DNA of 64,000 bases from Setoptus koraiensis. Taxonomy: Eukaryota > Animalia > Arthropoda. The notes below the pieces were generated by a model. That model did not search any database. It saw only the letters and a program-made list of their open reading frames with translations, and was not told the DNA's origin. The stretch is taken from the NCBI GenBank assembly GCA_048013815.1, contig CM106585.1, positions 15,376,001 through 15,440,000 of the forward strand. The letters are read 5' to 3'. A program made the position numbers and the translations under genes. This document shows positions 16,355-45,035 of this stretch, piece by piece (position 1 is the first letter of the stretch; the number at the start of each line of letters is the position of its first letter).

Positions 16355-19300
16355 ATGAGTATTATTCAATGTATACTGTTGTTGGCGGCAGGCGTTTGTG
16401 CGACCAACAAATGGGCCCCGGGCGACGCTGCGCCCACCAACCGAGCATCGGAGACGGGACTGCCTGCGAGACTCGAAATAAACGCTCGCCTGCGAATTGC
16501 TGCAACTGGGGTGAGTTCTTATTTCGCTCGTGATTTTATTTCTGACCATCATCGAAATGATGCACTCGATGATCACATTGACAATTATTGCTATTTGCGC
16601 CATTCTGACAGGCAAAAGATGATTGCAGCTACCGGGTCGACGAGTACATCGACAAGCCCAATTCGAGGGTCACCATCCGATTGCAAAATCAATCAACTGG
16701 CCAGTACACCACCTACTACAGACTCGGCGACCCGCACCAAATGGACACAATAACGCAATTCGACGAAACAAAACAAGAGTGTCACATTGTGAAATTGAGC
16801 TCCCAATGGAGCCTGCAAAAGCTCTCAAAATTGGTGTCGCTGTTGCCCGGCGAGTATCAGATAAATGACGACGAATCAAATTCAAAATCAAAGTCGACAG
16901 TGATAGGCACTGGCTCAATATTATACATAGTGATGAACAAATTAAACAAGAAACTGACGTTTGAGGGTCGCACATTTGACAATGAACGTTTCACGCATCT
17001 AAACTATTTCTCTACGCTGTTCGATTTGAGTGGGGACCAGAAAAAAAAGAATGGGCTTAATTTAAACGGCCACGACGGCTTGGCGCTGCGTGTCACTGTT
17101 GGCATGCCGCTGAGCGTCTCTAAATCGGCCCCTCAATCGGGCGACAGCTGGGAGCTAGCCACGAGCAACGTGATGACGCAATTAGACAGAGTTCCCTATA
17201 CCGTTGTGATGGATATTGTGAATCGAGGCGCCACTTATGATGACGCAAATGGCCAAGATGGCGAAAAAGACAAGCCTATCTCTCGTTCGGTCTATGCTGT
17301 TCTCATTGATTATTATATGGCCCGGCCATTGGTCAACAACAACAATATGCTAACGGAGGCAGATGAGGGCCCCCAATTGGACGGTCATCGATTCACGGAA
17401 CCGTTCATTCTGCCATTGGGCCTGTGGTGTTGGGTAGGCTACGAGTCGAGCGTGTATAGTCTGGAATTGGATCACGATCAATTCAGTGGCGTCTACTATG
17501 ACGAGCTGGCCAGCTCGCAAACGGCCAACGATATGTTTTACATGGCCTACGATGGCAAAACCAAGACATTGCGTTACGACACTCCCGGCCGGAAGACAAT
17601 ACTAGATCTGAAACAAAATTGGGCCTACCACCTAAGCAAGAACACACAGCCAGCTGAGCCCCAAGTGGCGGATCCCCAGCAGCTTGGAGAGCCAGAGAAT
17701 TGCTTTCAACCGCCGATAGGCATCGATATTTTGCAAGTTGATCAACAGCAACAGGAGCCGTGCAAACAGCAACTCGCCACGGATAGTAAGTGTTCGCTTA
17801 TTGAAATGGACACAGAAACTGTCAGCAGCAAGTACAAAGATCTGGCGCGCATACTGGGACTGAGCTCCATGGATCGCATCTATCTGATGGGCCAGGCGGA
17901 TATAGATGGCCTGAATTGTCATGTCTACGAGCGTCTCGTGATACCCGAACAGTTGCCGAAAATATTCGGTTTTCGGCCCATAGAGGCGCAATTGGTGTAT
18001 TTTCTCATAGTGTATGTTGTTCACGACAACAGTTTACTGGACGACGAGTTGTCTCTAAAGTACAATACAATGACATCGTGGCCAAAGCGTTTGGTGCTGC
18101 TGTCGTTCAACACGAGCACCAAGAGGCGCCAATTAGAGGCCTCAGTGATGTTCACGCAATTCTCTTGGACATTGCAAGTGGGCCCGAACGAGGCCGACTC
18201 GGGCGTGTCGGGGCCAGTGCGCTCGGTGCACTTGTTTGACGTCGACCAATGCGCCCCCATTAGGAGGGGTCGCGCCAGGTTGGAATTCTTCGTTGAGCAA
18301 CAAGGTGACACATTGTACAGTTCAAGCAAGAGTGACTTTTTAGTGGATTCTCGTTGGAAAACGCTCACAACAACAGCTCAGGCCAGTCTGCAGCAATGGA
18401 TAATGGGGCACATTAGTGACAGTTACGGTATATCACGGGCCAGAGTGACCAATCTGGAGCTGACATTTCGGCGACAGGCCGTGCTCGTACGGGCCATCCT
18501 GCTCGAACTTCCCGACGTCCACTGTGAGCAATCCACGAATCCATCTTAGACACTCATGCTTTGTTTCTTCGATACTGTATTCTCACGAATGTCATCTATC
18601 ATTGCTATTCATGTCTGCCCGACCCGCCAGCCGAAATCAAACCTTTGGGATACTTTGCGGACTGTTATTACCCTGCCGAGAAACTGGCCGAACTGGCCAG
18701 CAAGTGGCAAAACACACGAATAACCTACTGGATCTCGCTAGATGAATGTCATCTCGAGGGTGCCGTCAGTGGGGCCCACACGATAACCTATTGTCCCAAT
18801 TATAATGGGATGTGCATTGTTGTTGCGCACACTGACATGCCCCTGTTGTCTAGTTCCCGATTTAATCGGGGTTCCACCGCTGACAGGTCATTTTGTTCAG
18901 TGTACACCGTGCAACAAGTGAGTACTCAGAGTAAATTACCGAACAACTCCCTGCGTCAACTTATTGACGACTCCCAGCGTCTATTGACGGCCAGGCCCAT
19001 CAGTGGCAAACTCAAGCTTTTATGGGACGGACCGAACAAAACAATGAATAGAAAATTGACGGAGTTCAAATTCGTCGCCAGAGTAAAAAGTGTCAAGATC
19101 GGCCTCATGGAATCCATTCGAGAAGTGGAGGCCCTCTCCGGTCTCAATTTCATGGTCAGCAGGCAGGTGAGCGGAGATCCGATCGACAATTCAACAATGA
19201 GTGGCCATCTTAACGAACAAGTGTCAGCAACAAATTATTATGTAACGAATATTTCGCGAACGGATGATGATTACCCCGTGGGCCTCATTTACTGTCACGA

Positions 19301-20606
19301 GGCTTGTCAATTAAGTGACCACTGTCATTCTTGGTCGTTTTGTCGCACAAAATCAACACAATCTTGGTGCACGTTGACCGATTTAGAGCTTACACAAGCC
19401 GTTCTTCTGGATTTATCCCGATTGAAAACAGCTGCCGAAAGGAAACTTCCGGTGACATATTCACCACAGCAATTTGACGAAAAGCGTGTCTACTATTTGG
19501 AAAGCAATGATCAGTGTAGCTTACACTCAAAAGATTACTATCAGTTGTATGAGGAATCGACTGGGAACAATTCCGTTCAACTTCAACCTGATCAGCTAAA
19601 ACAATTTGCCTTTGTCTCACTGGAAGAATGCGCTCGATTGTGTTTCACGCACGAGCTGCCCTATGACGAAAAAAACAATTATAACGGTGCCTATCAAGTG
19701 TGTGAAAATTTTAATTATTGTCCAGTCATATCACTTTGTCACTTTGATGGTCTTAGTGGTTCCGATTTGAACTTTTTTTCGCAACAAACAAACAAAGATC
19801 CAATGACATTGTTCAGAGGGCGCAATTTGGAACAACAATTCAACCTGAGGCAACAATGTCATCGCTATCACCGTAACTATTTGCAATATTTTCAAAAGCT
19901 ACTATTTCTGCGATTAACCCTAACTGATACAAGCTCTGCAAAGGAGATTTCTTCGTCCAGTGATGTCATCACTAAATTTGCCAATCTGAATTTCAATCAA
20001 TGCATTCGTCATTGTGCTCTGGCCGACGACCGATGCCTTGCCTTCGATTACTGCAGAGCTTCAATGAGTTCCACCTGTCTCATATACACTATTAAAAGTC
20101 CCGGCGCTGCGTTGAACGGAGACTCGCCAGATTATTCGCCGGAAGTAATTGAACAATACCCTTATTTTTCTCAGCAAACAACAGAAGCAAACAAACCTGC
20201 AGTGAAATACAAAGTTGCGCTGAGGAGTGACGAGAGGTGCGACCATCATTTTCTCATCGACACATATGCAAATGTCAAGCTGAGTCTGTCTAAACATAAA
20301 TATTTCTCCGATAGCATGATTTTAGAGCAAGATCAGTATATTAGCAATAGCATCGAACGATCCGACTTGTTCACAAATGGAACAGCCATAACAAGCAACA
20401 AAATCAACAATGATATGAATACATCTAATCATAGTCTCGTAAATTTCGCTACTTTCGCCATTGGACTAGCGATGGGGGTGCTTATCTATCTTATGGTGCC
20501 GAGTTATGTAGTGCGTCGTGTCAAGCGGCGCCAGGAAACGGAACACATCCGATTCAAGGTTTTCAGCTCAGTTCCTAATGAACACCGCCAACATTGCTCA
20601 CGATAA
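16355..20606 (+). CDS. Large type I membrane protein with about 3 PAN/Apple-like Cys modules, 3 exons (16355-16510, 16612-18523, 18631-20606), 1347 aa
   Basis: Signal peptide MSIIQCILLLAAGVCA. GT-AG introns (phase 0, then phase 1) join three ORF-track ORFs in frame. Repeats CHEACQLSDHCHSWSFC, CARLC...CENFNYC and CIRHCALADDRCLAFDYC. C-terminal TM followed by RRVKRR. Confidence 0.8.
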
Positions 20607-27092: not shown

Positions 27093-28127
27093 ATGACCAA
27101 TGCCATGCACCGTATTGGCTATTGGTGGAGCGAAAAGAAGAGCACAAAATTGAACATATCTGAATTGGAAACATTGTTACTTAAAAATGATTGTCAACTT
27201 ATCAAAATCCATCTTGACAGATCTCTCGAAGAGCAAGGACCTTTCTCTGTCATAATACATAAACTAAGTGACATCATTGTCAAAGCCGATCAAGGAGACA
27301 CAAACGCTAAGCGTGCAATACAAGCATTCGAGAACTATGTTCGAAAGCATCCAGAAATCACCGTTCTAGATCCACTTGACAACGTCAGGACGTTATTAGA
27401 TAGATATAATCAATATCGTCTAATAGAGGAAAGTGGTCTCGCAAAAGAGGACGTTGTATTCACACCGGCATTTGTACACTTAACAAGTAACAATATTGAT
27501 GTCAATAGGGGAAGGATAAAACGCTCTAAAGTTACGTTCCCGTTGGTCTGTAAACCCATTCTGGCACATGGTTCAACGGCGGCCCACCAGATGTGTATTA
27601 TATTCAACGAAACTGGCCTGAAAGATGTTAAACCGCCTTGTGTCGCACAATCTTTTGTTAATCACAATGCAAGATTATTCAAATTGTTTGTCATCAAGTA
27701 CAAGTATTATGTCATCGAACGACCATCTTTGAAAAATTTCCAGGCATGCGAACGTGATACGGTGTTCTTCTATAGTCATGATATTTCAAAACCCAATTCG
27801 GCATCTTCCCTGACCGAACTTGATGAACAGGATCAAGAAGATTCGAAAAAGAGCCCATGTCGCGAAAGATTGGATAGAATAGTGGAGGTTTTCAGTGACA
27901 AACTGGGTCTCACTTTTTATGGTATTGATATAATTATAGAAAATTGCACCTCGCGCTATGCCATAATTGATATGAATACATTTCCTGGTTACGATGGAGT
28001 AGACGATTTTCCGGACATGTTCAAGGAAGTCATCCTAGATGCTATATCTCCAACAGGTACAGCATCTTCTCATCTAATCAAACCGAGAAAAGCTACCGAT
28101 ACAGACTCGGGTATTGAATCAACGTGA
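27093..28127 (+). CDS. ITPK1: Inositol-tetrakisphosphate 1-kinase (ATP-grasp), intronless
   Basis: IGYWWSEKK, IIHKLSD, CKPILAHGS.AAHQM, VAQSFVNHNARLFKLFV and GIDIII...IIDMNTFPGYDGV motifs. Confidence 0.93.
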   Translation: MTNAMHRIGYWWSEKKSTKLNISELETLLLKNDCQLIKIHLDRSLEEQGPFSVIIHKLSDIIVKADQGDTNAKRAIQAFENYVRKHPEITVLDPLDNVRTLLDRYNQYRLIEESGLAKEDVVFTPAFVHLTSNNIDVNRGRIKRSKVTFPLVCKPILAHGSTAAHQMCIIFNETGLKDVKPPCVAQSFVNHNARLFKLFVIKYKYYVIERPSLKNFQACERDTVFFYSHDISKPNSASSLTELDEQDQEDSKKSPCRERLDRIVEVFSDKLGLTFYGIDIIIENCTSRYAIIDMNTFPGYDGVDDFPDMFKEVILDAISPTGTASSHLIKPRKATDTDSGIEST

Positions 28128-28162
28128 TCAATTTGTATACATAAATATATTGAACGTTGCAT

Positions 28163-28687
28163 CTACAATTCTGCCCTAGTCTCTTCTTGCTTCTTGAGCT
28201 CTTCCACTTTTTTAATAAATTCTGCTTTCTCAATGCATCCATCACAGCTGACTCCCCTCTCTTTGAGTATCCTCTTAAGGTCGCCAACTTTCAATTTCTT
28301 CAGATCAACAGTCTTGAGGTCGATGGGTTTTTTCTGTTTAAGTTCGCATATTTGTGGATCCCTAGATTTTAGATGTTCACATATTTTACTAGCTGGCATT
28401 GTCCAAGCGATCCTTTCTGCCATTTCGGTGTATGTGCGTGTGGCAGAAACGTCCTGGCCTCCTAAGAAATAGCAAAATCTTTGCTCAGCCCCAACGGCAG
28501 TCTTACACATTTTTAAAAATTCTGAGGCCACATCTCCGGACTTTGCACCTGGTTTTACCGTTTTTTCTAATTTCTTGACTACTGAAAAACATACTGGACA
28601 ATCATCTTCGCTCAAATTGAACACAGGTTGCATAAAAAACAATAAAGCGGCTCCCAAAACGAGTGTTATCCGACTTGAACACCGCAT
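28163..28687 (-). CDS. MANF: MANF/ARMET (mesencephalic astrocyte-derived neurotrophic factor), intronless, 174 aa
   Basis: Signal peptide; saposin-like domain with six Cys (CPVC...C...RFCY...ICE...ICE); SAP-like domain with LKKLKVGDLKRIL and CDGC; KDEL-like C-terminus RAEL. Confidence 0.95.
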   Translation of the reverse strand: MRCSSRITLVLGAALLFFMQPVFNLSEDDCPVCFSVVKKLEKTVKPGAKSGDVASEFLKMCKTAVGAEQRFCYFLGGQDVSATRTYTEMAERIAWTMPASKICEHLKSRDPQICELKQKKPIDLKTVDLKKLKVGDLKRILKERGVSCDGCIEKAEFIKKVEELKKQEETRAEL

Positions 28688-29048
28688 TATAGATAGATGC
28701 TGCTAATTGATAAATAGATTAATAGTTAAAAATTTTCTATAACAGTCACTCTTGTTAATATATTTTTAGTTGAATAAATATATTGATGATACTGGTATTA
28801 ATACTATGTAAAGCGCAGGAAGACTATTTCAGAGCTTTGTGAATACTATTCAGTGAATTGAGAGATGAGGTGGCACGCGAAAACCGACCCTGAAAATAGC
28901 CGTACGATTGCTGAATTGTTGCTTGAATTGAACAGTGATCGCGGTAAGAATCAGATGCGGGGGGTGGGTCACAACAAAACACAACAGCAAGTAACACTAA
29001 ACAGGGCGCAACGTCTCACTCTAACCGAGTTAAACAAGGCGCGTTAAT
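28342..29048 (-). repeat. MANF 5' block (codons 1-115 plus upstream DNA), donor copy of a dispersed duplication
   Basis: Aligns by eye to 30419-31121, including non-coding motifs TAATACTATGTAA, CAGGAAGACTA, TGAGGTGGCACGCGA, GTCACAACAAAAC and GGCGCGTTAAT. Confidence 0.9.
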
Positions 29049-29417
29049 TTGTGCAAACCCGAGACAGGGCGTGGGGGCAAAATTTGCAGTGAAAATGTTT
29101 GAGTTGTCATCAGTCAGATTAAAAGATTCACAATTTGATTCCATTAATAATGCATAGGGACAACTATGACAGCGTCCTGAAACATTTAATGTGACACTCT
29201 ATGCTCATGTTTGTATTCTAGCTTGCACTATGCGCCCCTGGTGGAATAAAAAAAAACGCCCGGAAGTGCAGTGGATAAAGGCACACAACATACAATTGAA
29301 TATTCATGAATAGTTCAATACTGTTCAAAATTAGCGCCTAGAAAGCTACATTGGAGAAAGTCAAGTGAGTTATGCTGAGTCATCTGTAGAGTTGTTCGGG
29401 AAGATGATTATTTTTTA

Positions 29418-30764
29418 TCACAGAATAGAGAATCCACACAGATCTTCTATAGCTCGCCACCTCATCGTTCTCTCTTTCGTCTCACTTGTTATCTGTCGCA
29501 TTTCTTCTTTAATCAAAATTATATTCTTGTAATCATCCTCTAATGAATTTTCCTGTGCCATTTTGTAGTAACCTAAAAACGTGGTCTTTTTCTTTTGTAA
29601 CTTAAGGTTTCGTTGTTTAACTTCTAAGGCTCGAGATTCTAGTTCCAATTTTCTTTGATTGTAATACTGAGACTCAATTTGGTATGTGGCCTTCAAATGA
29701 TTTTCCAAAGCTGGTGGTGCCGTCCACTTTGTGGATTCAGTTGCTCTGTTGGATAAACTTTCCAATTGATGTTGGAGGATTTTTTTATCAGAGGCTGCTT
29801 CTTCTTGCGCTTTCAGAGCTTTGTCTAGATCCAATTGCAGCTCAGTCATCTGTTCCAAGTTATATTGCAACGATTTAAGCTGCGTCTGAGAATGGTTATA
29901 CCTAGAATACGTCAAATAGCAAAAACTACCGGCAAATAATATTACGCAGACAACACACGCGATGACATCCCTTGCGTATCCGTTCTTTTTTGGTGGCCCA
30001 AATAGAACAACGTCTGTAGATTTCAGCATAATTTTGTGCTTGTGTTTAGCATTTGTAATACCCAATTGTGTGAAGAATTGTGGCTCGGCCACGGCCAATC
30101 TTGGCAGCTGGGAGCCGTCAACCAATTTGGCTGCAAAGTTTTGAGCATATTGAGGTAATTCAACATGATTGATGAGCCAATCTAACGTGTCTTCTACAGT
30201 CCAATTGTGTACTTGTGACTGTTTCCATGATTGCCATAGCTCCTCTACAGTGATTGAGTTATCTTTGCCATTTAAATGGAATCTCTTGTGCCTATCCGCA
30301 CCATTGCTCAACGACAGCTCCTCCCTTATGAAATTGTGACTCTCGTCATTATCTATCTCGCCATCATTGTCATCGTCGAGATTACTGTGCAATAGTTTGA
30401 TGGCGCTAAAACATATTGGTTCGCATACTTGTGGATCCGTGGATTTTAGATGTTCGCAAATTTCACTAGCTGGCACGTTCGAAACGATCCTATCTGCAAT
30501 TTCGGTGTATGTGCGTGTGGCAGAAACGTCCTGGCCTCCTAAGATGTAGCAAAATCTTTGCTCAGCCCCAATGGCAGTCTTACACATATTTAAAAATTCT
30601 TTGGCGACATCTCCAGAGGTTGCGCCGGCTTTCACGGATTTTTCTAATTTCTTGACTACTGAAAAACATACTGGACAATCATCTTCGCTCAGATTGGACA
30701 CAGGTTGCATGAAAAACAATAAAGCGGCTCCCAAAACGAGTGTTATCCGGCTTGAATATCGCAT
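29418..30764 (-). CDS. Chimeric MANF(saposin domain)-STIM protein, intronless, 448 aa
   Basis: Residues 1-115 are 97/115 identical to the neighbouring MANF. Residues 116-448 are STIM: EF-hand DDDNDGEIDNDE, SAM (VHNWTVEDTLDWLINHVELPQY...VLFGPP), TM, CC1 and SOAR (WTAPPALE...RWRAIEDLCGFSIL). ATG at 30764 is equivalent to the MANF ATG. Confidence 0.9.
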   Translation of the reverse strand: MRYSSRITLVLGAALLFFMQPVSNLSEDDCPVCFSVVKKLEKSVKAGATSGDVAKEFLNMCKTAIGAEQRFCYILGGQDVSATRTYTEIADRIVSNVPASEICEHLKSTDPQVCEPICFSAIKLLHSNLDDDNDGEIDNDESHNFIREELSLSNGADRHKRFHLNGKDNSITVEELWQSWKQSQVHNWTVEDTLDWLINHVELPQYAQNFAAKLVDGSQLPRLAVAEPQFFTQLGITNAKHKHKIMLKSTDVVLFGPPKKNGYARDVIACVVCVILFAGSFCYLTYSRYNHSQTQLKSLQYNLEQMTELQLDLDKALKAQEEAASDKKILQHQLESLSNRATESTKWTAPPALENHLKATYQIESQYYNQRKLELESRALEVKQRNLKLQKKKTTFLGYYKMAQENSLEDDYKNIILIKEEMRQITSETKERTMRWRAIEDLCGFSIL

Positions 30765-31121
30765 TATAGATGAATACCGATAATTAATAATTAGATAAAT
30801 AACAATAGATGTTATATAATAGTTGCTTCTAGAAATATGTTCTGGGTTAGTGTAATAAATATAGAAAAATGATAATAATATTGCTAATACTATGTAAGGA
30901 TCAGGAAGACTAATTTGGAGCTTTGCTAATGGGAAAGTGAGGTGGCACGCGAATAACCGACCCTTGAAATTACCGTCCGATCGCCGAATTGTCGCTTGAA
31001 TCGGGCAATGTTCGCGGCGAGAATCAGGTGCGAGGGGTGCGTCACAACAAAACGCGGCAGCGAATAACACTAATTAAGGCGCAACGACTCATCTCGACTC
31101 ATCTGAACATGGCGCGTTAAT
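30419..31121 (-). repeat. Duplicated MANF 5' block forming the 5' part and upstream region of the chimeric gene
   Basis: Homology to 28342-29048 ends at ...TGCGAAC| (codon 115/116), where STIM sequence begins. Confidence 0.9.
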
Positions 31122-31419
31122 ATGTGTACGGGTAGAACTTGCTTGGGAATTTCATAAAGCGGCCGCGGTGCCGACGGTCGCAGATACTCCAGTCAAATTG
31201 CGGCAATCGGCCATCACCACGGTTATATGCAACAGCAGTCTATCCGAGGTTTGTAAACAGTCGAAATTAAATCCACGATGCACCGGGATTCTTAGGAGAG
31301 GACTGAAAATGACTCTTCAGTCTCACATTTATATGGAACAGTTGTATATTCGTGAATACAGTTCAGCACTGTTCTAAGCATAAAAGTTTTATTATAATAT
31401 ATTATCCAATCAATCACCA

Positions 31420-32478
31420 ATGATAAACAGGCGGAGAGCAGCCCAAGGATGGGGCAATTGTTCGGAGGATCAACAACCTCTCTTGGCTGCCCACACTTCT
31501 CCTTCATCATCTTCCATACCCATGGGTCCAGCGGTATCACACAGCGCCATAGATATGATGAAATTTAACAGGAGTTCTGGCCAAAATTATCCGGAAAATT
31601 TCGTCGAATATAGCCTCAAACCCGACGATACCTTGCACAATTTGTCGGTCAGATTTGCATGTCCAATAGCCTCAATTAAACGATTGAACAACATTATTAG
31701 TGATCAAGAATTCTATGGATTGTCCAGTTTGAAGTTACCAGTTGGAAAATTGGGAGTGATACAAGAGACGCTGGAATCATCAAATTCGATGCGAGAATCT
31801 CGTGGCTTTTCCAGAGACAATAAATTGGCAATCGTCAATAGCAATAATAACAATAACAGTGCCAGCTTCGTTGCCGCCCATGATCATGACAGACCAGCAG
31901 ATAGAACCATGTTCCAATCTAAAGAGATAGATATGGCCGTTTCTTCACATGACACAATAAATGATAAGATTAATTCATGTCACGTATCACCAGCATCGAT
32001 AACGAACCAAGCGATACATTTGCAGTCGTCCAGATTAAACCAACAACCAACTAAAACAAAACCAGATCTCACCAGAGCAGGGGATAATCATATCAATACT
32101 ACTACTAGTCATTCCAACGACAAAATCACATCATTACTCTCCAACCAGCCAGGCCGATCGAATTCGTTGGACGCCATATACAAGGATCTAGATAAGAGTG
32201 TTGCAAGGGCCAAATTGGCGGCGGAATTCATCGAGCAAAAGGCCACTGATTTGATTCAGACCATAACAGAGAACGAGAGTTCCGAAGCAAAACTTGATAG
32301 TAGTAACATTCCAGAAAATAATCCGTCCACTCGTAGTATTCAGCAAATTGAAGAAGGCCTCACTGACTTGGGTCTAACTGTTCACGGACTAATACTATTT
32401 ATTTTTATTATATGCCTTGTTGGTCCTCTTGGCTATGTGATCTATCTCGAAGAGACGGCTCAAAATTCAAAACTGTAA
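31420..32478 (+). CDS. LysM domain and C-terminal TM protein (LYSMD3/4-like), intronless
   Basis: LysM motif EYSLKPDDTLHNLSVRFACPIASIKRLNNI...LKLP, low-complexity linker and C-terminal TM (GLILFIFIICLVGPLGYVIY). Confidence 0.85.
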   Translation: MINRRRAAQGWGNCSEDQQPLLAAHTSPSSSSIPMGPAVSHSAIDMMKFNRSSGQNYPENFVEYSLKPDDTLHNLSVRFACPIASIKRLNNIISDQEFYGLSSLKLPVGKLGVIQETLESSNSMRESRGFSRDNKLAIVNSNNNNNSASFVAAHDHDRPADRTMFQSKEIDMAVSSHDTINDKINSCHVSPASITNQAIHLQSSRLNQQPTKTKPDLTRAGDNHINTTTSHSNDKITSLLSNQPGRSNSLDAIYKDLDKSVARAKLAAEFIEQKATDLIQTITENESSEAKLDSSNIPENNPSTRSIQQIEEGLTDLGLTVHGLILFIFIICLVGPLGYVIYLEETAQNSKL

Positions 32479-35383: not shown

Positions 35384-38300
35384 TCGCCAGATAAATATTT
35401 ATCTATTTGTTTGGTGTCGTTGCGTTTATTTGCTCTGCAGTGTTTTGCTGCAGCGCCTTTTTGCACTTGTTCGCCGGTGATTATATCAATGTGTATGTGT
35501 CTGGATTGAGCAGCGACACAGGTAGATAGGGAGAGAGAGAGAGAGAGAGAGAGAAAAAACCCTTTTAGAGGACCCTGCTCATGTTATGTAATGTCGTTGT
35601 GTCTTATATCTGTGTTGTTGTCGTATATCCATGTTGTCCATACATAAAGTGTATAAACACACACACACGCACACGTATGCGTCAGTTTGCAATTGGGAGA
35701 CGGAGGGATTCAATTTAATCTTGAGACCGCTCTCATGCACTACTTGACAGGCAACTACTACGGATAATAACTAAACGCGCATCTCCTTCTTGTTTCAACG
35801 ATGATTTTGATGTGCGATGCCAACACACACACACACACACACACGCACGCCGCCGCCATCATGGTTGTATCAGAGCGATAATATGTATGGGATAAACTCA
35901 AATGGGGCTACACAACACGATGTAGATAGGCCCTAGATAAGCTGGCAGTGAATGAAAAAGTATTGAAGCGTCAACAAACCAATTGGAAACAAAGTATGCG
36001 CGCGCTACAAAGAGTAAACAGAGTTTAAAGACTCGTAATGATGATGTAACTGGCGACCAATAACGCCAACGGAACATTGTTCATGCATTATCCGTCTATC
36101 TCGTATATCTTAATCTATGTGCTGTTATTATGTGTGCCATGGGGCGACTGCTATTTGACAATTATTTGCGGGCCGCCCAATTCATTACAACTATAACTTG
36201 CAATTTGTAATGGCGCTGGTGGGCGCACCAAGGGCCGCATCAAGGGGCTACGCGCCCTCGCTCTCCGGTTCAATACGGTGTAAACTTTTAATTAGAGTTA
36301 ATGATGTTTTTCAATGACTGCTATATTAACGGCGTATTAAGTGCACCTGCCTAGGGCGCCAACAGTGTATCCAAGGTGTATACAAGCCATAACAACAAGC
36401 CGTGATGGGGCCCGGCTGCGAACGCAAAAAGTAGGCCCAAATGGCGGTCGCTGGCTCGGCCCATTTATTGCATGCTCGCGCAAAAGAGTATATTACAAAC
36501 GCATTAGCAAACTTACCTATTGCTGGCTATTGGAAAACGACGTTTTGAAAAACGTCGTCGTCGTGGTGGTTGTTGTTGTTGTCCGGTTTGTTGATAGCGC
36601 AATGTAACATTTTTCGCGTTGCTGTTGTTGGCTGCTGGTAAGTTGTTACGACTGGTGCAACGGTACGAGTTGCACTTGATTATTTGTAGTGCTTCTGATG
36701 GATGAGTGTGTATCACAGTGGCATTACTTCTTTTTCTTCTACTCAACTACTAGTGCACACTCTGTTTTCTCTGGCACAATGTTGTTGTTGTTTGATGACG
36801 CAATTGATTGTAACGGTATAAATATGATGATTGATATGAACACTGTATATACACTAACAGTTGTACAGTGTATATAACACTAACCGTTAGTTATATCGTA
36901 CTAATACCGTAGTTACACGCGGCACACGCGCACGTTAGCAAGTAAAGCACACTAGTATCGACAACTATATCGAGCGAGTGTATGATTTCTAGTTGTTGTC
37001 GCCTTGTTTGCACCATTAACACGTTGTTGCGTAATGGTTGTAGTGCGTTTTACTTGTACTTGTGCGTCGTCGTGGTTGCGCTTGCTGTTGTGTGGTGGTT
37101 GCTCGTCGGTTGTCGGTTGTCGGCTGTCGGTTGTTAGCCGGCGGTCGTCGATTGTTGGCCGGCGGTCGTCGGTTGTCGGTTGTTGGCCGGCGGTTGTTGA
37201 TCGGCGGTTGTGGTTGCGGTCAGTGGCTGGACAAATCGAGCATGAATTATTGAGTGTTGCCGGAATATGGATAAAGATGATAAATATTCATGGATCTGGT
37301 CTGATGGTTGGCCAAGTGCGCTGAGAACGGGGCTTATTGAGAAATAGCGAGCTAGCGAAACAGAGCGAGAGACAGAGAGAGAGCTGGACAAAATTCATTA
37401 CTTGCTGCCGGCCACAACGTAATGGTAATCGTGTGCCATGGACTCATTCATGTGGCTGTTGCACTTGTCGTGTCGATGATCATCACATCGTCGCCTGTAT
37501 ATCATTTGCGATCGTGCTCGTATTTATGTATGGATATCGGCGTGCCAGTGCGGATATGTATGGATACTGTGGTATTATTATTCGTTTTTTGCAATGATGC
37601 TCACATGATTTAATACTTTAACACTTCTCGAGCTTGGTTTAACTGTCTGGCCAACTGTGAGCTGCTTAACATTCAAATATTCTTTTTATATATACTGTTC
37701 ATATAAATATCATGCCGGCTAATGGTGCACTATGAATGTAATACTATGAAACTATGGCTGCGTCGTTGTTGTTGTTGCTGTTGTTGTTGTTGTTGTTGAT
37801 GACTGCTATTATTATTATGACTGTCTGCTTATCGTGTACACACATGTGATGAGTGAGCCAAGCCGATCAACCGATGCGTATTTGTGATTCTTTAGTGATG
37901 CAATGCAATTGGCAAACGCTGGCAAGCTTGCCGACACGACGCAATGCCCAGGGCCAATTAGAACAACGCACACACTCAGTCAGGGATAAGAGTTGCGATA
38001 GATAATAGTTGCAGTTGCTTTACATAGACAGTTGCAGCGAGTGATATGTATACAGTATGTATGTAGTTATATGGTAGTTGCAGTGGCAGGCACCACGTAA
38101 ACAGCCCAGATAGAGAGAGAGAGCGGATAAAGCTGGCGAGCTGGCCGGCCAACGGTTGGCCGACGGAGCCGCTTTCGATCGCCGCCTGCTGGCCGGCGCC
38201 GCCGCTGCTGCTGCTGGGGCTTGATTGAGACCGTTAGTTGCGCAATGTAGCGTTGCAGCGGCACCAATGATACTTTATTGTTATCATTACCATGATTACC

Positions 38301-38455
38301 ATTAACATTGGCGCTATGGTAGCCTTCGATACTCTGATATTATGATTGTTGTTGCCGTTGTTGTCGCTGTCGGCGCTGTTGTTGTTCATTGCACTCGCTG
38401 GCTTGGGACGCACACTGCTCCGACGGGCTGCTCACTCGGCCTTTGTCTGGCTGGC

Positions 38456-38540
38456 CCGATACTCCGATGGCTCGATACTGCGATGGCTCGGCACTCCGAT
38501 GGCTCGGCACTCCGATGGCTCGGCACTCCGACGGCTGGAT
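38456..38540. repeat. 16-bp minisatellite (CCGATGGCTCGGCACT), about 5 degenerate units
   Basis: Direct tandem units visible at 38464-38527, with degenerate flanks. Confidence 0.85.
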
Positions 38541-38715
38541 ATCCCAGCGGCTGCTACGAGAACTCGAGCTTGTGGTGTTTTCAGTGGCGCACGCAAGCCT
38601 TTTCGCTGGCTCCTCTCGGGAATTACAACAACCCGCTATTTGGCGCTGCGCTGTCTGCGCGCTGCTCCGATCGATCTTGGTGCGGTCGTGGCGGTGGCGG
38701 CTGTGTGCAGCTTTG

Positions 38716-38890
38716 CGTTGTTGCTGTTGTGGTGGCTGTTGTTGTGGCTGTTGCTGCTGTCGTTGCTGTCGTTGTTGCTGTTGTGGTGGCCGTTGTTGTG
38801 GCCGTTGTTGCTGTTGTCGTTGTTTTTGCTGTTGTTGTTAGCAATGGCGTTGTTGCTGTTGTTGTTAGCGATGGCGTTGTTGCTGTTGGT
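38716..38890. repeat. Degenerate GTT/GCT/GTG triplet repeat
   Basis: Continuous low-complexity triplets that generate poly-V, poly-L and poly-C spurious ORFs. Confidence 0.9.
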
Positions 38891-39812
38891 GGCGCTGCTG
38901 TCGTCTGGTGCACAACACTGCTAAACTACAATTACTGGCGCTGTCCGCTGCTGGCTGCTCGCCTCGGCTGACATGGTCTGATTCAACTGAACGCTGAGCC
39001 TCCGCTCTTATTTAATGCGCTTTATGTTTTGCGTCCTCTGTCGCTGTCGCTGTCGCGCCGCTGCCCTGCTGCTGATGCTGGCACCGTTGCCGTTGCCGCT
39101 GCTGATGATTTTATTGGCAGCGCTGCATCAACTCTTACGTAACTGGCTCTCGTAGCGGCGCATTCGCAGCAGGCCCCACACCGCTGACTGTGCACTGTTG
39201 GTTGCACGCTTGCACGGCCAACAAAAAAGTGGCTCGCTCCGCGACAAGTGTTTGCTGCTCTCTGTTGTCGCTGTTGACGCTGCTGTCGCTGTTAATGCCG
39301 CTGCTGCTGCTGTCGTTGTCGCTGTTGTTGTTGTCGCTGTTGTTGGCGTTTTTGCTGTCGCTGTTGCTGTCGCCCAGATGATGCAATTTCGCAGCAAACT
39401 CACACAGAGCTCACACAAAACCCACACAAAACTCGCAGCAAACTCGGCACAAACTGCCACAGCAAGCGAGCCGGCGCTGTGCGCACTGGCGGCTGGCTAG
39501 CTGACAAGCGAATAGAATTACGTAACAGCATCAGCGGACTGGCATGCCGCTCAAGTGTCACACTCTGTGCAGACTCTTTTCAGACTCTGTGCAGACTCTT
39601 TTCAGACTCTGTGCTGACTCTGTAACAGGGACTGCACAGGGATGCAGGTCGCCGCAGTCCAGTGGCTGCAGTCTGGGCGCAGCGGTCTAGGCGCCGGAGT
39701 CCAGTGCGGAGCAGCGTGCGCAAACCTAGCCGCAGTGCAAGGTCTGTGCAAGGTGGTGACAAACTGTGCTAAGTATGGCCGGCGGGTGGGCGTGAGCGCA
39801 TCGACTTCGGGG

Positions 39813-39851
39813 GCTGAATGTTGACCGCTGAATGTTGACCGCTGAATGTTG
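39813..39851. repeat. 14-bp tandem repeat GCTGAATGTTGACC, about 2.8 units
   Basis: Directly visible. Confidence 0.85.
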
Positions 39852-41591
39852 TGCGGCTTGTACGGGCACACTTGTTCGCGCCCGCCTACAGGCGCATTTC
39901 TTCGTACCCGGTCTAGGGCCGTCGGCAAGAGCTCACACCGCACACCGCACACTGCGCACGCCTTCGCTGGTTAGATCGTCGCTGTGCCACCGGACTCCGA
40001 TGATCGGAGCCGCCGGCCATGACGGCGATTTGTGTGCGCTGTGAGTGTTTGTACGCTTGTGTATTTGTGTTTTGGCAAGCTAGCTCGCCAACATACCGCT
40101 GGCAAGCTAGCTCTGGCTGGCTGGCCGGCTGGGTGCGTGGAAGCCGTGCCCGAGCGCTGCGCCGACGGCCTAGTGTCCGACGCAAGCGGACCGAGCGCTG
40201 TCTTGAGCGCGGTGCGGCCGGCCCGTGCTCACACATTATCACTGCACGCCGCGCACCGTGTAGCTGGCTGTGCCACTAACCATATTAGTGGCACATACAA
40301 GCGAGCAAACGTGGCAAGCTCGCTGCCTATTACGTAATGTACCTAACATACATACAAAACTTGCTGGCCGCGTCGCTTGCGTAACTTGTGCAACTTGCGC
40401 AGCTTGCGTGGCGGCCACTTGGCTGGCCCGGCGCCACCGTTCACTTGCAATGACAGTGGGGCCGCAGTTGGAATGAAGCGCGGTTGAAGTTGCTGCTCGG
40501 CCGGCTCGGTGATTATGCGCGCTCTGTGTCGCCTTTAATTTGCGCCAACCACGGCCCCATTCAGTGCAACAGAAATCTACCAGAATGTACCAGAATCTAG
40601 CCAGAAGTGTCCAGTCGGCGCTGAAGACAACGCCATAGGTGGTAATTACCCGGGCCACCGTTGCTTGCCGCTCTCTGGTTACTCTCTGTTGCCCCCCCTT
40701 TGTCGGCCCGCTCGGGCCGGCTCGTTGACCGGCGCCCGAGAGGAAGCCGGCAAACAATTGTGCAAAATAACATAATTGTGGCCGCGGCTCGCACGCACAA
40801 ACTCGCATAGGGCTAATGCGCGTAATATCGCGTTGTGTCGCGTTATTTGGGGGTTATATCGCGTTGTGGCGCGCAATATCGCGTTATGTCGCGCAATATC
40901 GCATAATGTGGCCCAATATCGCATAATGTGGCCCAATGTCGCCGGCTAGACTCGCCGGGATTATCGCCGGGCAGCAGTTGGCTAAATAGCGCGACTGCAT
41001 ACTATGCAATGCACAGTGAGACAAGTGCGACTGCAAAGTAGGAATATCGCGACTAAATAGCTGCAATAGTGCCACCAAATAGCTAGAATAGTGCGACTAA
41101 ATACTTGGCATTGTCAAGACCGTTAGCACGAACTACATAATCTGCAGTGAGTGCTTGTGTCGCCGCCAATTGGCTGTTTCCTCTCTGGGCGAGCCAGCGC
41201 TTGCCGGGGCCCAACAGCTGGCCAGTAGGCTGGCTTAGGCTCGGGCTTAGGTCGCCGTCGAGGAAGCCAGTCTCTCACTTAGGGATCAATTGTTGGCAAT
41301 TTTGCTGCTTCCTCTCTATCGGGTGCCCCTCGGCATACCTATAGAGGGCTGCAGCGAGCAACGGAGAGCCTCGGAGAGGTGCACGGGCTAGAGAGGCCTA
41401 TTGAAGGCTATTGAAAGCTATTGAAAGCACGGGCACGGGAAGCTATAGGAAGCTGCGGATATGTGTGTGTATAATGGGCAGCCAGAGACATCCAGAGGAA
41501 AGGGGCCAGCCGAGCGTGGCTGCTGCACGCAACCAAACAACAAGCGACCAATCTGCAACACTTAGGGCACAAGTTGTCAGAGGCAAAGCAT

Positions 41592-41602
41592 AGCAACAAC
41601 AA

Positions 41603-41646
<44 letters not shown>

Positions 41647-41660
41647 ACAGCAGCAACAAC
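41592..41660. repeat. CAG/CAA triplet microsatellite
   Basis: About 23 mixed CAA/CAG units. Confidence 0.9.
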
Positions 41661-42108
41661 ATTACATAACATGGCACAAAAATGCAGCTACTTGCCGGCG
41701 GCGCAAAAAGAACGCCAACTCTCCAAGGGGCCGGCCGGCCAGCCCAACGGGTAAAATCCGACTCTTGCAAAATGTTGGCTGGCTGGAGAGGGAGAGAGAG
41801 GGGGAGGCTGCGGGAAGAGCAGCGTAGAGAATTAAGAGTAAAGAATAGCTGGTTGCGCAACTTTTACAACTTGGGCCACTTTTGGGCTGGCTACACTGGC
41901 CAACTGCATGGGGGTCAACCAGCGCCAGGTACGCGCACAAGGGCACGCCAATCAATTACGGGCGCACGCTGTAATCAACTAACCGGATCAACTAGCCATT
42001 GCCAGTTGATTACATAACTACCATAAGTAGTTACCGGTAGTAGCTACATAACATATAGTTAGTTTTTTGATTATGGTGGTGGTGGCGCCACCATAATCAC
42101 CAGAGAGC

Positions 42109-42316
42109 GAGCCTCGGTGAAAGAGAGCCTTGTTGAAAGGGAGCCTCGTTGAAAGGGAGCCTCGTTGAAAGGGAGCCTCGTTGAAAGGGAGCCTCGTTGA
42201 AAGGGAGCCTCGTTGAAAGGGAGCCTCGTTGAAAGGGAGCCGCGCTAAAGGGGAGCCACGCTAAAGGGGAGCCGCGCTAAAGGGGAGCCACGCTAAAGGG
42301 GAGCCACGCTAAAGGG
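42109..42316. repeat. 16-bp minisatellite, 13 units in two subtypes
   Basis: Eight GAGCCTCGTTGAAAGG-type units (42109-42236, the first two variant), then five GAGCC(G/A)CGCTAAAGGG units (42237-42316). Confidence 0.92.
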
Positions 42317-43202
42317 GAGAGAGCCCTCCCAAAAGCCGTGTTAAAAGAGAGCGGGGGCCGTGTTAAAGTGGTAGCCATGGTATAAACACATGTGCCAATT
42401 GAATGTTTGACGTAAGCGCGAAAAGCGATTTAACGAATGGGTGAACAAGTGAACTGCTGCTCACAGCAACCAGCAGCCATATATCTTTGTCTGTTGGTTG
42501 CTGCCTGCCCCTTCCCCCCCCCCGCTCACCTGTGTGTCTTTTCAAAATACGCACAGGTGAGGGGGGACAGGACAGGACAGACAGTCGTGTCGTGGAACGC
42601 CGCTAAAATTATTAGCTGACTAACGCCGCTTTCGTGTGCAGCTTCTCCGGGCCTCAGTCACCTGGCCGGCGCCACAATGGCCCGCTGTAGCAACTTTAGA
42701 GGCAGCAGCTTTATACGTTACGTAAGTCACAATGAGTCAATCAGACTGACACTCAATGTCTGGCACTGTACACCGTTGGCACAGGTGCACCTAGGCCTAC
42801 CTGTGTTCACCTGTGCTGCTGGACGGCTGCAGGCAGCAGCTCAACTGGCTTTATCCGCCAGCGGCTCACTGCCACAACTGACTGCGGCGGCAAGCTGGCT
42901 GGCGGCTAGATTGGCGCCAGATTAGTGCCAAGAGAAGAGCAAGAGAGCACACTAATCTGACAGTTGAGAATAATGACAGCACCGGGTGAGACAGTGTCAT
43001 CGCACTGCGCCTAGCGATGCGACGCGAGCGGATGTCCACACGCCGACATTGTTATTATGTTAGTTTGTCACTACAACTAATAACTCTGGCGAGGCATAAC
43101 CGGCAACAACCGGCAACAACCGGCGGCCGCTGTCGTTGCCGCTGCCGCTGCTAAGATAATCCCGCCAGTCATTGTGTGTATAATTGTGTATATGAGGAGG
43201 AG

Positions 43203-43358
43203 CAGCAACGGCAGCAGCAACAACAGCAACGGCAGCAACAACAGCAACGGCAGCAACAACAGCAACGACAGCAGCAACAACAACAACAGCAGCAACAGCA
43301 ACGACAGCAGCAACAGCAACAACAGCAACGACAGCAGCAACAACAACAACAGCAACAG
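43203..43358. repeat. CAG/CAA/CGR triplet repeat, 52 units
   Basis: Directly visible; yields poly-Q, poly-L, poly-C and N/S ORFs in different frames. Confidence 0.92.
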
Positions 43359-45035
43359 CGCAAAGTCAACGGCGAGCTAGGCAAACATTATGTGCCAAGC
43401 TATGCAGTGACAAATGAGGGGCCCCGGACCCGCATAGACGCACATAGACACACATGGGGATACGCGGGCATGCATAGACATGCATGGACATACATCATTG
43501 GCACGGGCCCATTGTGCTTGGCTGGCTCGCTGGCCATCGAGCCGGCCTATTTAATATGGTGCCAGTTTTAAATGTCATCATCGTGCGCCTTGCCTCGGGC
43601 AACACCGGCGCCAGCCAGCCAGCCAGCGGTCTCGCGGCAAGCTGCTACCTAGCTGCAACGCAACAACAAACAACAAACAACAACAAATATACATATACAT
43701 ATACCTATTATCTGTCCCTGTCTCTATGTGTCGCATTATGTAAGCTCCGCCTGAATGAATATAGTGGGCCGAGTGATTGACGTCAACTTGGCTCGCTACC
43801 ACTAATACCGCATCGCAAATACCTCGCTTGCCCGTCCGTCCGGCTGGCTGGCTGGCTGGCTGGCGGCGCCCTTGCCGCTGCCTGTCGCGTGACCCATTTG
43901 AGCAAACAACAAAAAGCTCAAGGTGAGAGATGGGCACCAACAAAAATATACACAATAACATATAGTGCATGGCGGCAAGCGAGTCGTCGTTGTCATTATA
44001 GACATGAGTGGATGCCAGCACTTGAGAAAGCAAGATAGATGAGCTCAAATTAAACATACGTCCATATCCATATAGGCACGTGCAGTCACAGCCAGCCAAT
44101 GACACACTTGAACTGGCCAGCTAGGTGGCTAGCTTGCCGGGCGCGACAATGGGCCAGTAGCGCCGTATAGTACCACTCCGAGCACGTCACAACACGTCTC
44201 ATTCCGAGTCAATTCGCCTGGTGTCGCTGCTGGAGCCACTGACCAACTTTTGAAATAAATAATAAAACATGGGTCAAATAATGAAACGCTTAAACGCTAT
44301 TACGCTGCTACAAACTGTAATAACAGTTATAATGATAATAGACAGATAGATTGCCTACTTGGGCGCTTATTGGAGCCAGTCAGCTCGCTCAAGTGCCCCT
44401 CGAGTGTGTGTGTGTGTGGGGGGGGGGGCCCGTTTTTTGCCATCAACCATTTTTGTTGCATGACGCACTAAATGGGTGACTGGTGTCACTGTCTAACTGT
44501 CCAGCTATCCGCTACAGGCTATCGATGTCATGCAGCTCAACTGTGGTGTTGGCCATGTCAATGTCGCCAGCCATACGCCGACCCGGGCGCTTTCGGGATA
44601 TGCGGTGATGGTTGCACTATTCTTAGTAGATCCCACAATCTAGGATATGTGTTTTTGGGAATGTGTGGCCACGGTGGCGGCCCCAATGTGCGCTGTCGGC
44701 CAACAAACAAACTAACCTGACCTGACCAACTAGATAGTGTGTATCAGCTGGAAACGGGCTGCGTGAACACACACGCTTGACCAATTTGGTCGGGATTGTC
44801 AAAACATCTCTCGCCAAAAGATTTTTTCTTCTTCTTTGTTTGTTGGTTCTCTGCTATTGCTATTATTATCATCATTGTTATTATTTATATGTGTTTGTTT
44901 GCTTGCCAGCCAGCCAGCCAGTTTTGTTTGTTTGTTTGTTTATTCGCCATTTCGCGACTGTTGCACGTGCACGCCAGTAGATAACACTAGTAGAGCAAGC
45001 AGTTTAGTTAAGCGACTTGCCAACTCACAAGTTAC

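What the first reader, a model, noticed from the sequence alone, without database searches (positions are those of the whole stretch)
29418..30764. Intact MANF-STIM fusion gene: an ER-stress chaperone domain grafted onto the ER Ca2+ sensor
Seen: one stop-free 448-aa ORF. Residues 1-115 are a diverged copy of the adjacent MANF (18 substitutions, 84% identical by manual alignment) and keep the signal peptide and all six saposin-domain Cys. The switch to STIM falls one residue after the last saposin Cys (DPQVCE|PICFSAI versus MANF DPQICE|LKQKK). So the MANF SAP domain and RAEL retention signal are dropped and replaced by a STIM EF-hand (DDDNDGEIDNDE, canonical ligand positions intact), SAM, TM, CC1 and SOAR. 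Established: MANF is a UPR-induced ER-luminal protein whose saposin-like domain binds lipids; STIM senses luminal Ca2+ and gates Orai. Inference: a saposin-EF-SAM luminal sensor could couple ER stress or lipid state to store-operated Ca2+ entry. I know of no described MANF-STIM fusion. The divergence between copies, the preserved frame and the domain-boundary breakpoint argue for a real, selected gene rather than misassembly.
Basis: partly seen in the sequence, partly recalled or inferred. Interest (0 to 1): 0.92.

Follow-up and report, generated by a model that had tools for sequence, protein, structure and literature searches.

The report
Mite STIM gene with MANF head
In this intron-poor mite, the gene for the ER calcium sensor STIM has had its front end replaced by a duplicated copy of the neighbouring MANF gene's promoter region, signal peptide and lipid-binding-type domain, and the resulting intact, transcribed chimera has no counterpart in any database searched.

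Summary
A 448-codon open frame (29418-30764, minus strand) joins MANF residues 1-115 to a complete short-type STIM: EF-hand, SAM, transmembrane helix, CC1 and SOAR. The MANF part holds the signal peptide and a saposin-like domain with all six Cys, and is 97/115 identical to the intact MANF 730 bp downstream.

- **More than coding sequence was copied.** About 360 bp of MANF upstream DNA was duplicated too, so STIM also acquired MANF's 5' flank.
- **The junction is real DNA.** It sits in a read-derived contig at full single-copy depth.
- **It is transcribed.** Contigs from two runs covering only genes cross it unspliced, at equal depth on both sides.
- **It is probably the ancestral STIM.** It lies beside ITPK1, as STIM does in three related species. 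Ending just after SOAR is normal for this clade. Its distance to outgroup STIMs is ordinary.
- **No other case was found.** None appeared among 1.84 billion representative proteins, 60 metagenomic STIM loci or the literature.

Still unshown: that the saposin head does anything. Pairwise dN/dS is 0.34, but most polarisable replacements fall on the fusion copy, so relaxed constraint is not excluded. The proposed coupling of ER stress or lipid state to calcium entry remains speculation. Whether this is the genome's only STIM could not be tested.

The parts
29418..30764 (-). Chimeric MANF(1-115)-STIM open reading frame, 448 codons plus stop
30696..30764 (-). Signal peptide (residues 1-23), copied from MANF. 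It is the only signal peptide available to the STIM part.
   Evidence: Sequence shows a basic n-region and a hydrophobic core. 21/23 identical to MANF. Helix 2-18 in the model.
30420..30695 (-). Saposin-like MANF N-domain (residues 24-115) with six Cys
   Evidence: Pfam ARMET_N. AlphaFold model pLDDT 81.8. Best PDB matches are human MANF 2W51 (rmsd 1.7 A over 93 columns) and the CDNF N-domain.
30408..30419 (-). First 12 nt after the homology breakpoint (codons 116-119, PICF). They match MANF codons 31-34 (PVCF) at 11/12, so the junction may be composite or microhomology-mediated. C118 is a seventh, unpaired luminal Cys.
   Evidence: 2 of 1000 shuffles reach 11/12. This was a post-hoc test.
29997..30419 (-). 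STIM EF-SAM luminal sensor (residues 116-256). The canonical EF loop D130-E141 lies at 30342-30377.
   Evidence: Model pLDDT 85-92.
29907..29966 (-). Transmembrane helix (about residues 267-286)
   Evidence: Hydrophobic stretch aligned with the TM of STIM relatives. Long helix from residue 263 in the model.
29727..29903 (-). Shortened coiled-coil 1 (about residues 288-346)
   Evidence: Alignment A2. A similar short CC1 is seen in P0005, P0028 and P0034.
29424..29726 (-). SOAR/CAD Orai-activating region (residues 347-447). The protein ends one residue later.
   Evidence: Pfam SOAR 1-101/101. Matches 3TEQ.
29243..29417 (-). 3' untranslated region (minimum extent)
   Evidence: X8 contig 29243-29426 is collinear with the genome across the stop codon.
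30765..31126 (-). Duplicated MANF upstream block (5'UTR and presumed promoter) now in front of the fusion gene
   Evidence: 80% identical with about 15 indels to 28688-29053.
28163..28687 (-). Intact parent MANF gene (174 aa: N-domain, C-domain with CDGC, RAEL tail). Codons 1-115 (28343-28687) are the paralogous segment.
   Evidence: Transcribed.
28688..29053 (-). MANF's own upstream block, the source or paralogue of 30765-31126
   Evidence: MANF transcript contigs reach 28838.
31337..31377 (-). 40-nt island similar to 29291-29329 in the fusion gene's 3' flank, in collinear order and at similar spacing. It may be a trace of a larger tandem duplication.
   Evidence: score 39 against a shuffle maximum of 30. 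The rest of the spacer is not significant.
27093..28127 (+). ITPK1 (inositol-trisphosphate 5/6-kinase), the conserved neighbour of STIM in related species and the synteny anchor
   Evidence: Pfam. 66-77% identical to the ITPK1 next to STIM in L002-L007.

Best explanation
This is a real, expressed chimeric gene and most likely the mite's working STIM. A roughly 0.7-kb copy of the 5' module of the neighbouring MANF gene now stands where STIM's own promoter, start codon, signal peptide and short leader used to be. That module holds the upstream region, 5'UTR, start codon, signal peptide and the whole saposin-like N-domain. It is joined in frame exactly at the first helix of the EF-hand. The protein should enter the ER through the MANF signal peptide and sit in the ER membrane. 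There it should sense luminal Ca2+ with an intact EF-SAM and gate Orai with an intact SOAR, like the short STIMs of related mites. The selected contribution of the MANF module is probably transcription, translation start and ER targeting. The folded saposin-like head is carried along as a tolerated luminal appendage under relaxed, but not absent, constraint. Shown here: gene structure, duplication, DNA and transcript continuity, domain integrity, synteny and rarity. Inferred: translation as one chain, STIM function, and the passenger status of the head.
For: Structure and domains. The duplicated block includes the upstream DNA. DNA support: in X5, depth is even at about 124 across genes and spacers. 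A 1,886-nt contig (28643-30528) crosses the junction with no mismatch. K-mers shared by the two MANF copies have doubled depth. RNA support: X7 and X8 have zero depth over both spacers (28947-29188 and 30762-31487) but cover the genes. X7 contigs 29452-30528 and 30515-30668, and X8 contig 30045-30467, cross the junction with no joints. Depth is 6.2 on the STIM side and 6.8 on the MANF side. Orthology: ITPK1 is the immediate neighbour of single-exon STIM in three relatives and lies 1.3 kb from this gene. Ending just after SOAR is shared by all close relatives. The STIM part is 43-44% identical to spider and spider-mite STIM, the same as the relatives are. There is no second STIM in the window. 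Constraint on the head: dS 0.23, dN/dS 0.34, no indels in 345 coding nt against about 15 in 362 upstream nt. The fold is predicted intact. Relaxation: 6 fusion-derived against 1 MANF-derived replacement at conserved sites.
Against: The runs with gene-only coverage are not labelled as RNA, so their RNA nature is inferred from the depth pattern. Transcript contigs stop at 30668, so the first 32 codons and the start site are not covered. Contigs cannot prove one continuous molecule. Only this 64-kb window could be searched, so another intact STIM elsewhere in the genome is not excluded. No protein-level evidence exists. Keeping all six Cys and a confident fold could equally mean the head is functional. 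The contig elsewhere holds a perfect 5.85-kb palindrome, so the assembly is not flawless, although the fusion itself is backed by read-derived contigs.
Confidence: 0.6

Rival explanations
1. Neofunctionalised sensor. The saposin-like head is a working regulatory domain. It is joined rigidly to the first EF-hand helix and makes STIM activation respond to the luminal lipid, redox or ER-stress state. Alternatively, the captured MANF promoter puts STIM under stress control.
For: All six Cys are kept and the fold is confidently MANF-like. Pairwise dN/dS is below 1. The model runs one helix (111-129) across the junction, so there is no flexible linker. An extra Cys sits at 118, next to C114. The replacements cluster in the last helices, next to the junction, which could be adaptation to the new partner. 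The MANF upstream block was co-duplicated.
Against: The estimated dN/dS for the fusion branch is about 0.5 and is not separable from neutrality. Retention of six Cys is expected about 16% of the time by chance at this divergence (my estimate). Nearly invariant MANF residues are replaced (K101E, W95S, I113V). No ERSE- or UPRE-type motif lies upstream of either copy. The MANF N-domain alone has no MANF activity in flies. There is only one lineage, so recurrence offers no test.
Confidence: 0.2
2. Redundant or decaying duplicate. The chimera is real and transcribed but is not the functional STIM. A conventional STIM elsewhere does the work.
For: A tandem-duplication origin would at first have left an intact upstream STIM. 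The 40-nt island at 31337-31377 hints at a larger duplicated unit. The rest of the genome could not be searched.
Against: The chimera sits at the conserved ITPK1-adjacent position. The STIM part has a full-length SOAR, an intact EF loop and an ordinary distance to outgroups. No stop or frameshift appears in three independent read sets. There is no STIM relic where the upstream copy would lie. It is expressed at about a third of the MANF level.
Confidence: 0.12
3. The MANF part is not translated with STIM. Transcripts start inside the gene or splice from an unseen upstream exon into the acceptor-like TTTTAG at the junction, and the in-frame continuity is a one-in-three accident.
For: The sequence just before codon 120 looks like a splice acceptor. 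The 5' end of the transcript is not covered.
Against: Contigs run straight through the junction at equal depth on both sides and no joint was reported. Without codons 1-23 the STIM part has no signal peptide, and its first Met comes after the SAM domain. Relatives' STIM genes are single exons.
Confidence: 0.05
4. Assembly artefact that joins two paralogous regions.
For: The same contig contains a perfect palindrome typical of fold-back artefacts.
Against: The junction lies inside a 1,886-nt read-derived contig at single-copy depth in X5, and inside contigs of X7 and X8 from another study. Six further runs from several studies hold 87-97% of the sampled words. The two MANF copies differ at 10% of coding sites, so they are not collapsed.
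Confidence: 0.03

Closest known systems
STIM family (human STIM1/STIM2, Drosophila Stim, C. elegans STIM-1), and most closely the unnamed short STIMs of related mites (P0001-P0034)
   Same: EF-hand plus hidden EF-hand, SAM, a single TM helix, CC1 and a full SOAR. The NWT glycosylation sequon and the DVVLFGPP motif are kept. It ends a residue after SOAR like its closest relatives. It neighbours ITPK1 like them.
   Different: The native signal peptide and short leader are replaced by the MANF signal peptide plus a 92-residue saposin-like domain. There is no S/P-rich region or polybasic tail, which is a clade trait and not specific to this gene. CC1 is shortened. Gene order relative to ITPK1 is rearranged.
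MANF/CDNF (ARMET) family
   Same: Signal peptide and N-terminal saposin-like domain with three conserved Cys pairs. 84% identical to the mite's own MANF. The predicted fold superposes on human MANF at 1.7 A.
   Different: It lacks the SAP-like C-domain with CXXC and the C-terminal ER-retention motif. That half binds BiP (PMC6358605 abstract) and is needed for activity in flies (PMC3760817). The protein is membrane-anchored through STIM and not soluble.
Chimeric genes born from partial or tandem duplication of a neighbour (5' module or promoter capture)
   Same: The parent gene is kept intact next door. The duplicated block includes upstream DNA. The junction is in frame at a domain boundary. 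The product is transcribed.
   Different: The recipient appears to be the lineage's ancestral, probably single-copy, STIM rather than a spare duplicate. This is an inference, because the genome-wide copy number was not tested.

Membership tests
STIM | Cleavable N-terminal signal peptide directing a type I ER membrane topology | tested here: met
   Residues 1-23 have a basic n-region and a hydrophobic core, but they are MANF-derived. Judged by inspection only, with no dedicated predictor.
STIM | Luminal canonical EF-hand with acidic Ca2+ ligands, paired with a hidden EF-hand | tested here: met
   PF25578 E 8e-23. Aligns with 2K60 and 2L5Y from residues 115-117. Loop D130-E141 is acidic at positions 1, 3, 5, 9 and 12.
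STIM | SAM domain following the EF-hands | tested here: met
   PF07647 E 7e-11 and PF00536 E 5e-9. pLDDT about 90.
STIM | Single transmembrane helix followed by cytosolic CC1 and SOAR/CAD | tested here: met
   Hydrophobic residues 267-286 aligned with relatives. SOAR PF16533 covers 1-101 of 101, E 1e-22. Matches 3TEQ.
STIM | C-terminal S/P-rich region and polybasic tail | tested here: not met
   The protein stops one residue after SOAR. So do all close relatives, and in L002 the next gene starts 85 nt after the STIM stop. This is a clade-wide trait, so it is not held against membership.
STIM | Store-depletion-dependent oligomerisation and Orai gating | not testable with these tools
   Needs cell physiology. 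The presence of Orai in this genome could not be checked.
MANF/CDNF | Saposin-like N-domain with six conserved Cys | tested here: met
   PF20145 E 2e-19. Foldseek to 2W51, 6HA7 and 2W50 at probability 1.00.
MANF/CDNF | SAP-like C-domain with a CXXC motif | tested here: not met
   No PF10208 hit in the fusion, while it is present in the neighbouring MANF.
MANF/CDNF | C-terminal KDEL-like retention signal | tested here: not met
   The fusion ends in ...FSIL. MANF ends in RAEL.
Duplication-derived chimeric gene | Paralogous block shared with an intact parent, in-frame junction, and transcription across the junction | tested here: met

The most novel reading that the evidence does not exclude
The saposin-like head is a working input domain. 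Because it continues as one helix into the first EF-hand helix, lipid binding, a redox change at the extra Cys118, or opening of the saposin fold would shift EF-SAM stability. That would set the threshold for store-operated Ca2+ entry. Meanwhile the captured MANF upstream region would make STIM dosage follow MANF's regulation. This would be a natural ER-state-to-Ca2+-entry coupler that does not exist in any other sampled animal.
Probability: 0.15. Interest if true: 0.85.

Novelty: new variant of a known kind. Interest (0 to 1): 0.6.

Why it matters
STIM's luminal architecture (signal peptide, short leader, EF-SAM) is essentially fixed across animals. This gene looks like a natural experiment in which a folded, disulfide-bonded lipid-binding-type domain was bolted directly onto the Ca2+-sensing helix of what appears to be the ancestral STIM copy. 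If it works as STIM, it shows how much the luminal N-terminus tolerates. It also gives a ready-made construct for asking whether luminal inputs other than Ca2+ can be wired into store-operated entry. In addition, it is a clean, datable example (dS about 0.23) of 5'-module capture, with promoter region, signal peptide and a domain taken from a neighbour, in an extremely compact genome. If the head is only a passenger, the finding is a tidy case of chimeric gene birth and of modest wider interest.

Tried and rejected
- **Exact-sequence look-ups.** The fusion protein and the window's MANF are not on record. So no public gene model, organism name or further contigs could be obtained that way.
- **Word-index search with residues 1-115.** Restricted to proteins of 246-784 aa, it found nothing. 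The index needs shared 5-mers, so this blank is weak. The exhaustive phmmer search and Pfam scans of ten STIMs with long N-termini also showed no ARMET_N.
- **Combined alignment for structure prediction.** MANF and STIM relatives were mixed to model the whole luminal region. MAFFT twice placed the relatives' EF-hand on MANF helices 1-3. I therefore modelled the head and the full chain with separate alignments, and inter-domain packing is not informative.
- **UPR elements.** A search for ERSE, ERSE-II and UPRE motifs found none upstream of either copy.
- **Relic of STIM's original 5' end.** tblastn with relatives' N-termini and ORF inspection of 25.8-27.1 kb and 31.1-31.6 kb gave nothing convincing. 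Signal peptides are too variable for this test.
- **Homology across the spacer upstream of the duplicated block.** Only one 40-nt island is significant.
- **Raw RNA runs of 2026 labelled 'organism C'.** That label looks like a much-sequenced species in which only a few runs hold mite sequence, so the single read-laying run went to runs known to hold the locus.
- **Synteny of other neighbours.** The 681-aa ORF at 18561-20606 is not homologous to the roughly 680-aa gene beside STIM in relatives.

Full report

Yes. The minus strand carries an open frame from 31070 to 29418, and its first ATG at 30764 gives 448 residues. Pfam places these domains on it:
- ARMET_N on residues 29-115
- the STIM-specific EF-hand on 115-181
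- SAM on 185-248
- a full-length SOAR on 347-447

The gene 730 bp downstream on the same strand (28163-28687) is a complete MANF, with ARMET_N, ARMET_C and a RAEL end. Residues 1-115 of the two proteins are 97/115 identical with no gaps. The six saposin-domain cysteines are all kept.

DNA homology ends immediately after codon 115. PDB sequence searches match the same chain to STIM1/STIM2 EF-SAM starting at residues 115-117, to SOAR, and to the N-domains of MANF and CDNF.

**2. What else is in the sequence?**

- **The duplication is larger than the coding part.** The 362 bp upstream of the fusion ATG (31126-30765) align to the 366 bp upstream of the MANF ATG (29053-28688) at 80% identity with about 15 indels. 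STIM therefore acquired MANF's 5'UTR and presumed promoter as well as its signal peptide and N-domain.
- **A possible trace of a longer duplicated unit.** A further 40-nt island (31377-31337 against 29329-29291) lies in collinear order at similar spacing. It scores above all shuffles. The DNA between is not significantly similar, so a longer original unit is only suggested.
- **The junction may be composite.** The first 12 nt after the breakpoint encode PICF and match MANF codons 31-34 (PVCF) at 11/12. Only 2 of 1000 shuffles do as well (the test was post hoc). This could reflect microhomology or a composite, two-step junction. It also leaves a seventh, unpaired luminal Cys at position 118.

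**3. Is it an assembly artefact?**

No.
- In run X5, depth is flat at about 124 over genes and spacers alike, which is DNA-like. A 1,886-nt contig (28643-30528) crosses the junction without a mismatch.
- The short k-mer stretches shared by the two MANF copies show doubled depth, as two single-copy paralogues should.
- Six further runs from several samples and studies hold 87-97% of the sampled words.

This matters because the same contig does contain a suspicious perfect palindrome further on.

**4. Is it transcribed as one unit?**

Probably.
- **RNA-like coverage.** Runs X7 and X8 are of unlabelled kind, but they have zero depth over both intergenic spacers while covering MANF, the fusion gene and the next gene. 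That pattern is expected of RNA.
- **Contigs cross the junction.** X7 contigs 29452-30528 and 30515-30668, and X8 contig 30045-30467, cross it collinearly with no joints. Depth is 6.2 on the STIM side and 6.8 on the MANF side.
- **3' end and expression level.** An X8 contig (29243-29426) runs through the stop codon into the 3'UTR. The fusion gene's depth is about a third of MANF's.

Caveats:
- The first 32 codons and the start site are not covered.
- Contigs cannot prove a single molecule.
- The RNA nature of X7 and X8 is inferred.
- The acceptor-like TTTTAG at the junction is not used in the dominant form.

**5. Is it the real STIM or a spare copy?**

Four lines of evidence point to the real one.
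- **The short C-terminus is a clade trait.** The closest homologues are unnamed proteins of 355-505 aa from public assemblies, 53-55% identical over the STIM part. All of them end within a few to about 50 residues after SOAR. In one relative the next gene starts 85 nt after the STIM stop.
- **Conserved neighbour.** In three different relatives, STIM is a single exon lying head-to-head with ITPK1 (L002-L004, L005-L006, L007). Here ITPK1 (27093-28127) is 1.3 kb away, although gene order is rearranged and MANF lies between.
- **MANF is also near a conserved neighbour.** MANF lies within 5 kb of an LRR gene, as it does in the eriophyoid mite Fragariocoptes setiger. The locus therefore looks like a junction of two ancestral neighbourhoods, and the rearrangement that joined them may have cost STIM its own 5' end. 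That last step is inference.
- **Ordinary divergence.** The STIM part is as similar to spider and spider-mite STIM (43-44%) as the relatives are (39-44%), so it has not decayed or accelerated.

No second STIM lies in the window. The rest of the genome could not be searched.

**6. Is the saposin head under selection?**

The evidence is ambiguous.
- **Pairwise rates.** Nei-Gojobori analysis of the 115 shared codons gives dS 0.229, dN 0.078 and dN/dS 0.34. The bootstrap interval is 0.17-0.72, and 0.4% of replicates reach 1 or more.
- **Most polarisable change is on the fusion copy.** With 14 outgroup MANFs, six replacements are clearly fusion-derived at sites conserved in at least 11 of 14 outgroups: M89I, E91D, W95S, K101E, R109T and I113V. 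Only one is MANF-derived, T49K.
- **Branch estimate.** Splitting synonymous changes evenly puts the fusion branch near dN/dS 0.5, which 115 codons cannot separate from neutrality.
- **What the absence of indels shows.** It shows selection for an open frame. That is required anyway, because this is the only signal peptide in front of STIM.
- **Cysteines.** I estimate that retention of all six Cys would occur by chance in roughly one case in six at this divergence.

On the structural side, the head modelled with a MANF alignment is confident (pLDDT 81.8) and superposes on human MANF (2W51) at 1.7 A over 93 columns. The full-length model draws one helix (111-129) through the junction into the first EF-hand helix. 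That would mean a rigid rather than tethered connection. However, that model had no alignment depth for the head, so this is a weak indication.

**7. How does it most likely work?**

I commit to the following, at about 0.6. The protein is targeted to the ER by the MANF signal peptide and anchored by the STIM transmembrane helix. It then acts as the mite's store-operated Ca2+ entry sensor through an intact EF-SAM and SOAR. What the MANF module was kept for is transcription, translation start and ER entry. The saposin-like head is a folded, tolerated appendage.

From general knowledge of the field, not tested here: luminal N-terminal tags placed after the STIM1 signal peptide are compatible with store sensing. 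That makes a 92-residue head plausible as a tolerated addition.

The more exciting reading is that the head or the captured promoter adds a new input. It is not excluded, and I give it 0.15-0.2. Points that weigh on it:
- No ERSE or UPRE motifs lie upstream of either copy.
- The MANF half linked to BiP binding and needed for in vivo activity in flies is the half that was lost.

**8. Is it novel?**

No MANF-STIM architecture was found in any of these searches:
- a length-restricted search with the MANF part
- an exhaustive HMMER scan of 1.84 billion representative proteins, where all 150 best hits align only from about residue 71 onward
- Pfam scans of ten STIMs with long N-termini, which instead show duplicated EF-SAM units
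- 60 STIM-bearing metagenomic loci with 4-kb flanks
- full-text literature searches, including the first eriophyoid genome paper

It is a new variant of two well-known families, produced by a known kind of event, namely duplication-derived chimeric gene birth. It is unusual in that the recipient seems to be the ancestral STIM copy.

Earlier notes of this scan describe the genome as an intron-poor mite. That fits the single-exon genes seen here, and I did not test it further.

Noticed in passing
window 47559-53408 and 53468-59316: A perfect 5.85-kb inverted repeat (100% complementary, 59-nt spacer). It creates two identical head-to-head copies of a truncated 859/870-aa protein-kinase gene (CaMK/MLCK-like). 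This looks like a fold-back assembly artefact or a very recent palindromic duplication.
   Followed up: partly
window 60001-64000: Beyond the palindrome the sequence turns strongly G-rich (GC 62-65%, GC skew +0.46) with runs of G. It is unlike the rest of the window (about 39% GC), and no tandem array was detected. It may be a contig end, foreign DNA or subtelomeric sequence.
   Followed up: partly
window 37000-44000: A GC-rich block (53-57%) full of imperfect trinucleotide-type repeats (CAG/CAA, GTT) and 16-27-nt tandem arrays, including a 13-copy 16-mer at 42109-42316.
   Followed up: no
window 28127-28163: The stop codons of the convergent ITPK1 and MANF genes are only 36 bp apart. One X7 contig (948 nt) runs from MANF into ITPK1, so their 3'UTRs overlap or abut. 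This illustrates how transcript contigs merge neighbouring genes in this compact genome.
   Followed up: partly
proteins P0174, P0176, P0178, P0182: Some STIM homologues from other organisms carry two or three EF-hand/SAM units in tandem ahead of the TM helix. These are luminal sensor duplications, which I have not seen described.
   Followed up: no
alignment A2; loci L002-L007: A whole clade of mite-like STIMs (355-505 aa) ends just after SOAR, without the S/P-rich region or polybasic tail. They are single-exon genes lying head-to-head with ITPK1. How they reach ER-plasma-membrane junctions without the lipid-binding tail is an open question.
   Followed up: partly
window 30374-30419 vs 28529-28597: The start of the STIM EF-hand helix (F-x-A-I-K-x-L) and MANF helix 1 (F-S-V-V-K-K-L) resemble each other enough that BLASTP reports E 1e-4 for that pair and MAFFT repeatedly misaligns them. 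This chance similarity may have provided the microhomology for the fusion.
   Followed up: partly
window 31420-32478 (+): A 352-aa ORF diverges from the fusion gene. It has no Pfam hit at E 1e-4, though by eye it has a LysM-like stretch and a C-terminal hydrophobic helix. An X7 contig over its 5' end shows an odd opposite-strand joint at 31511/31555.
   Followed up: no
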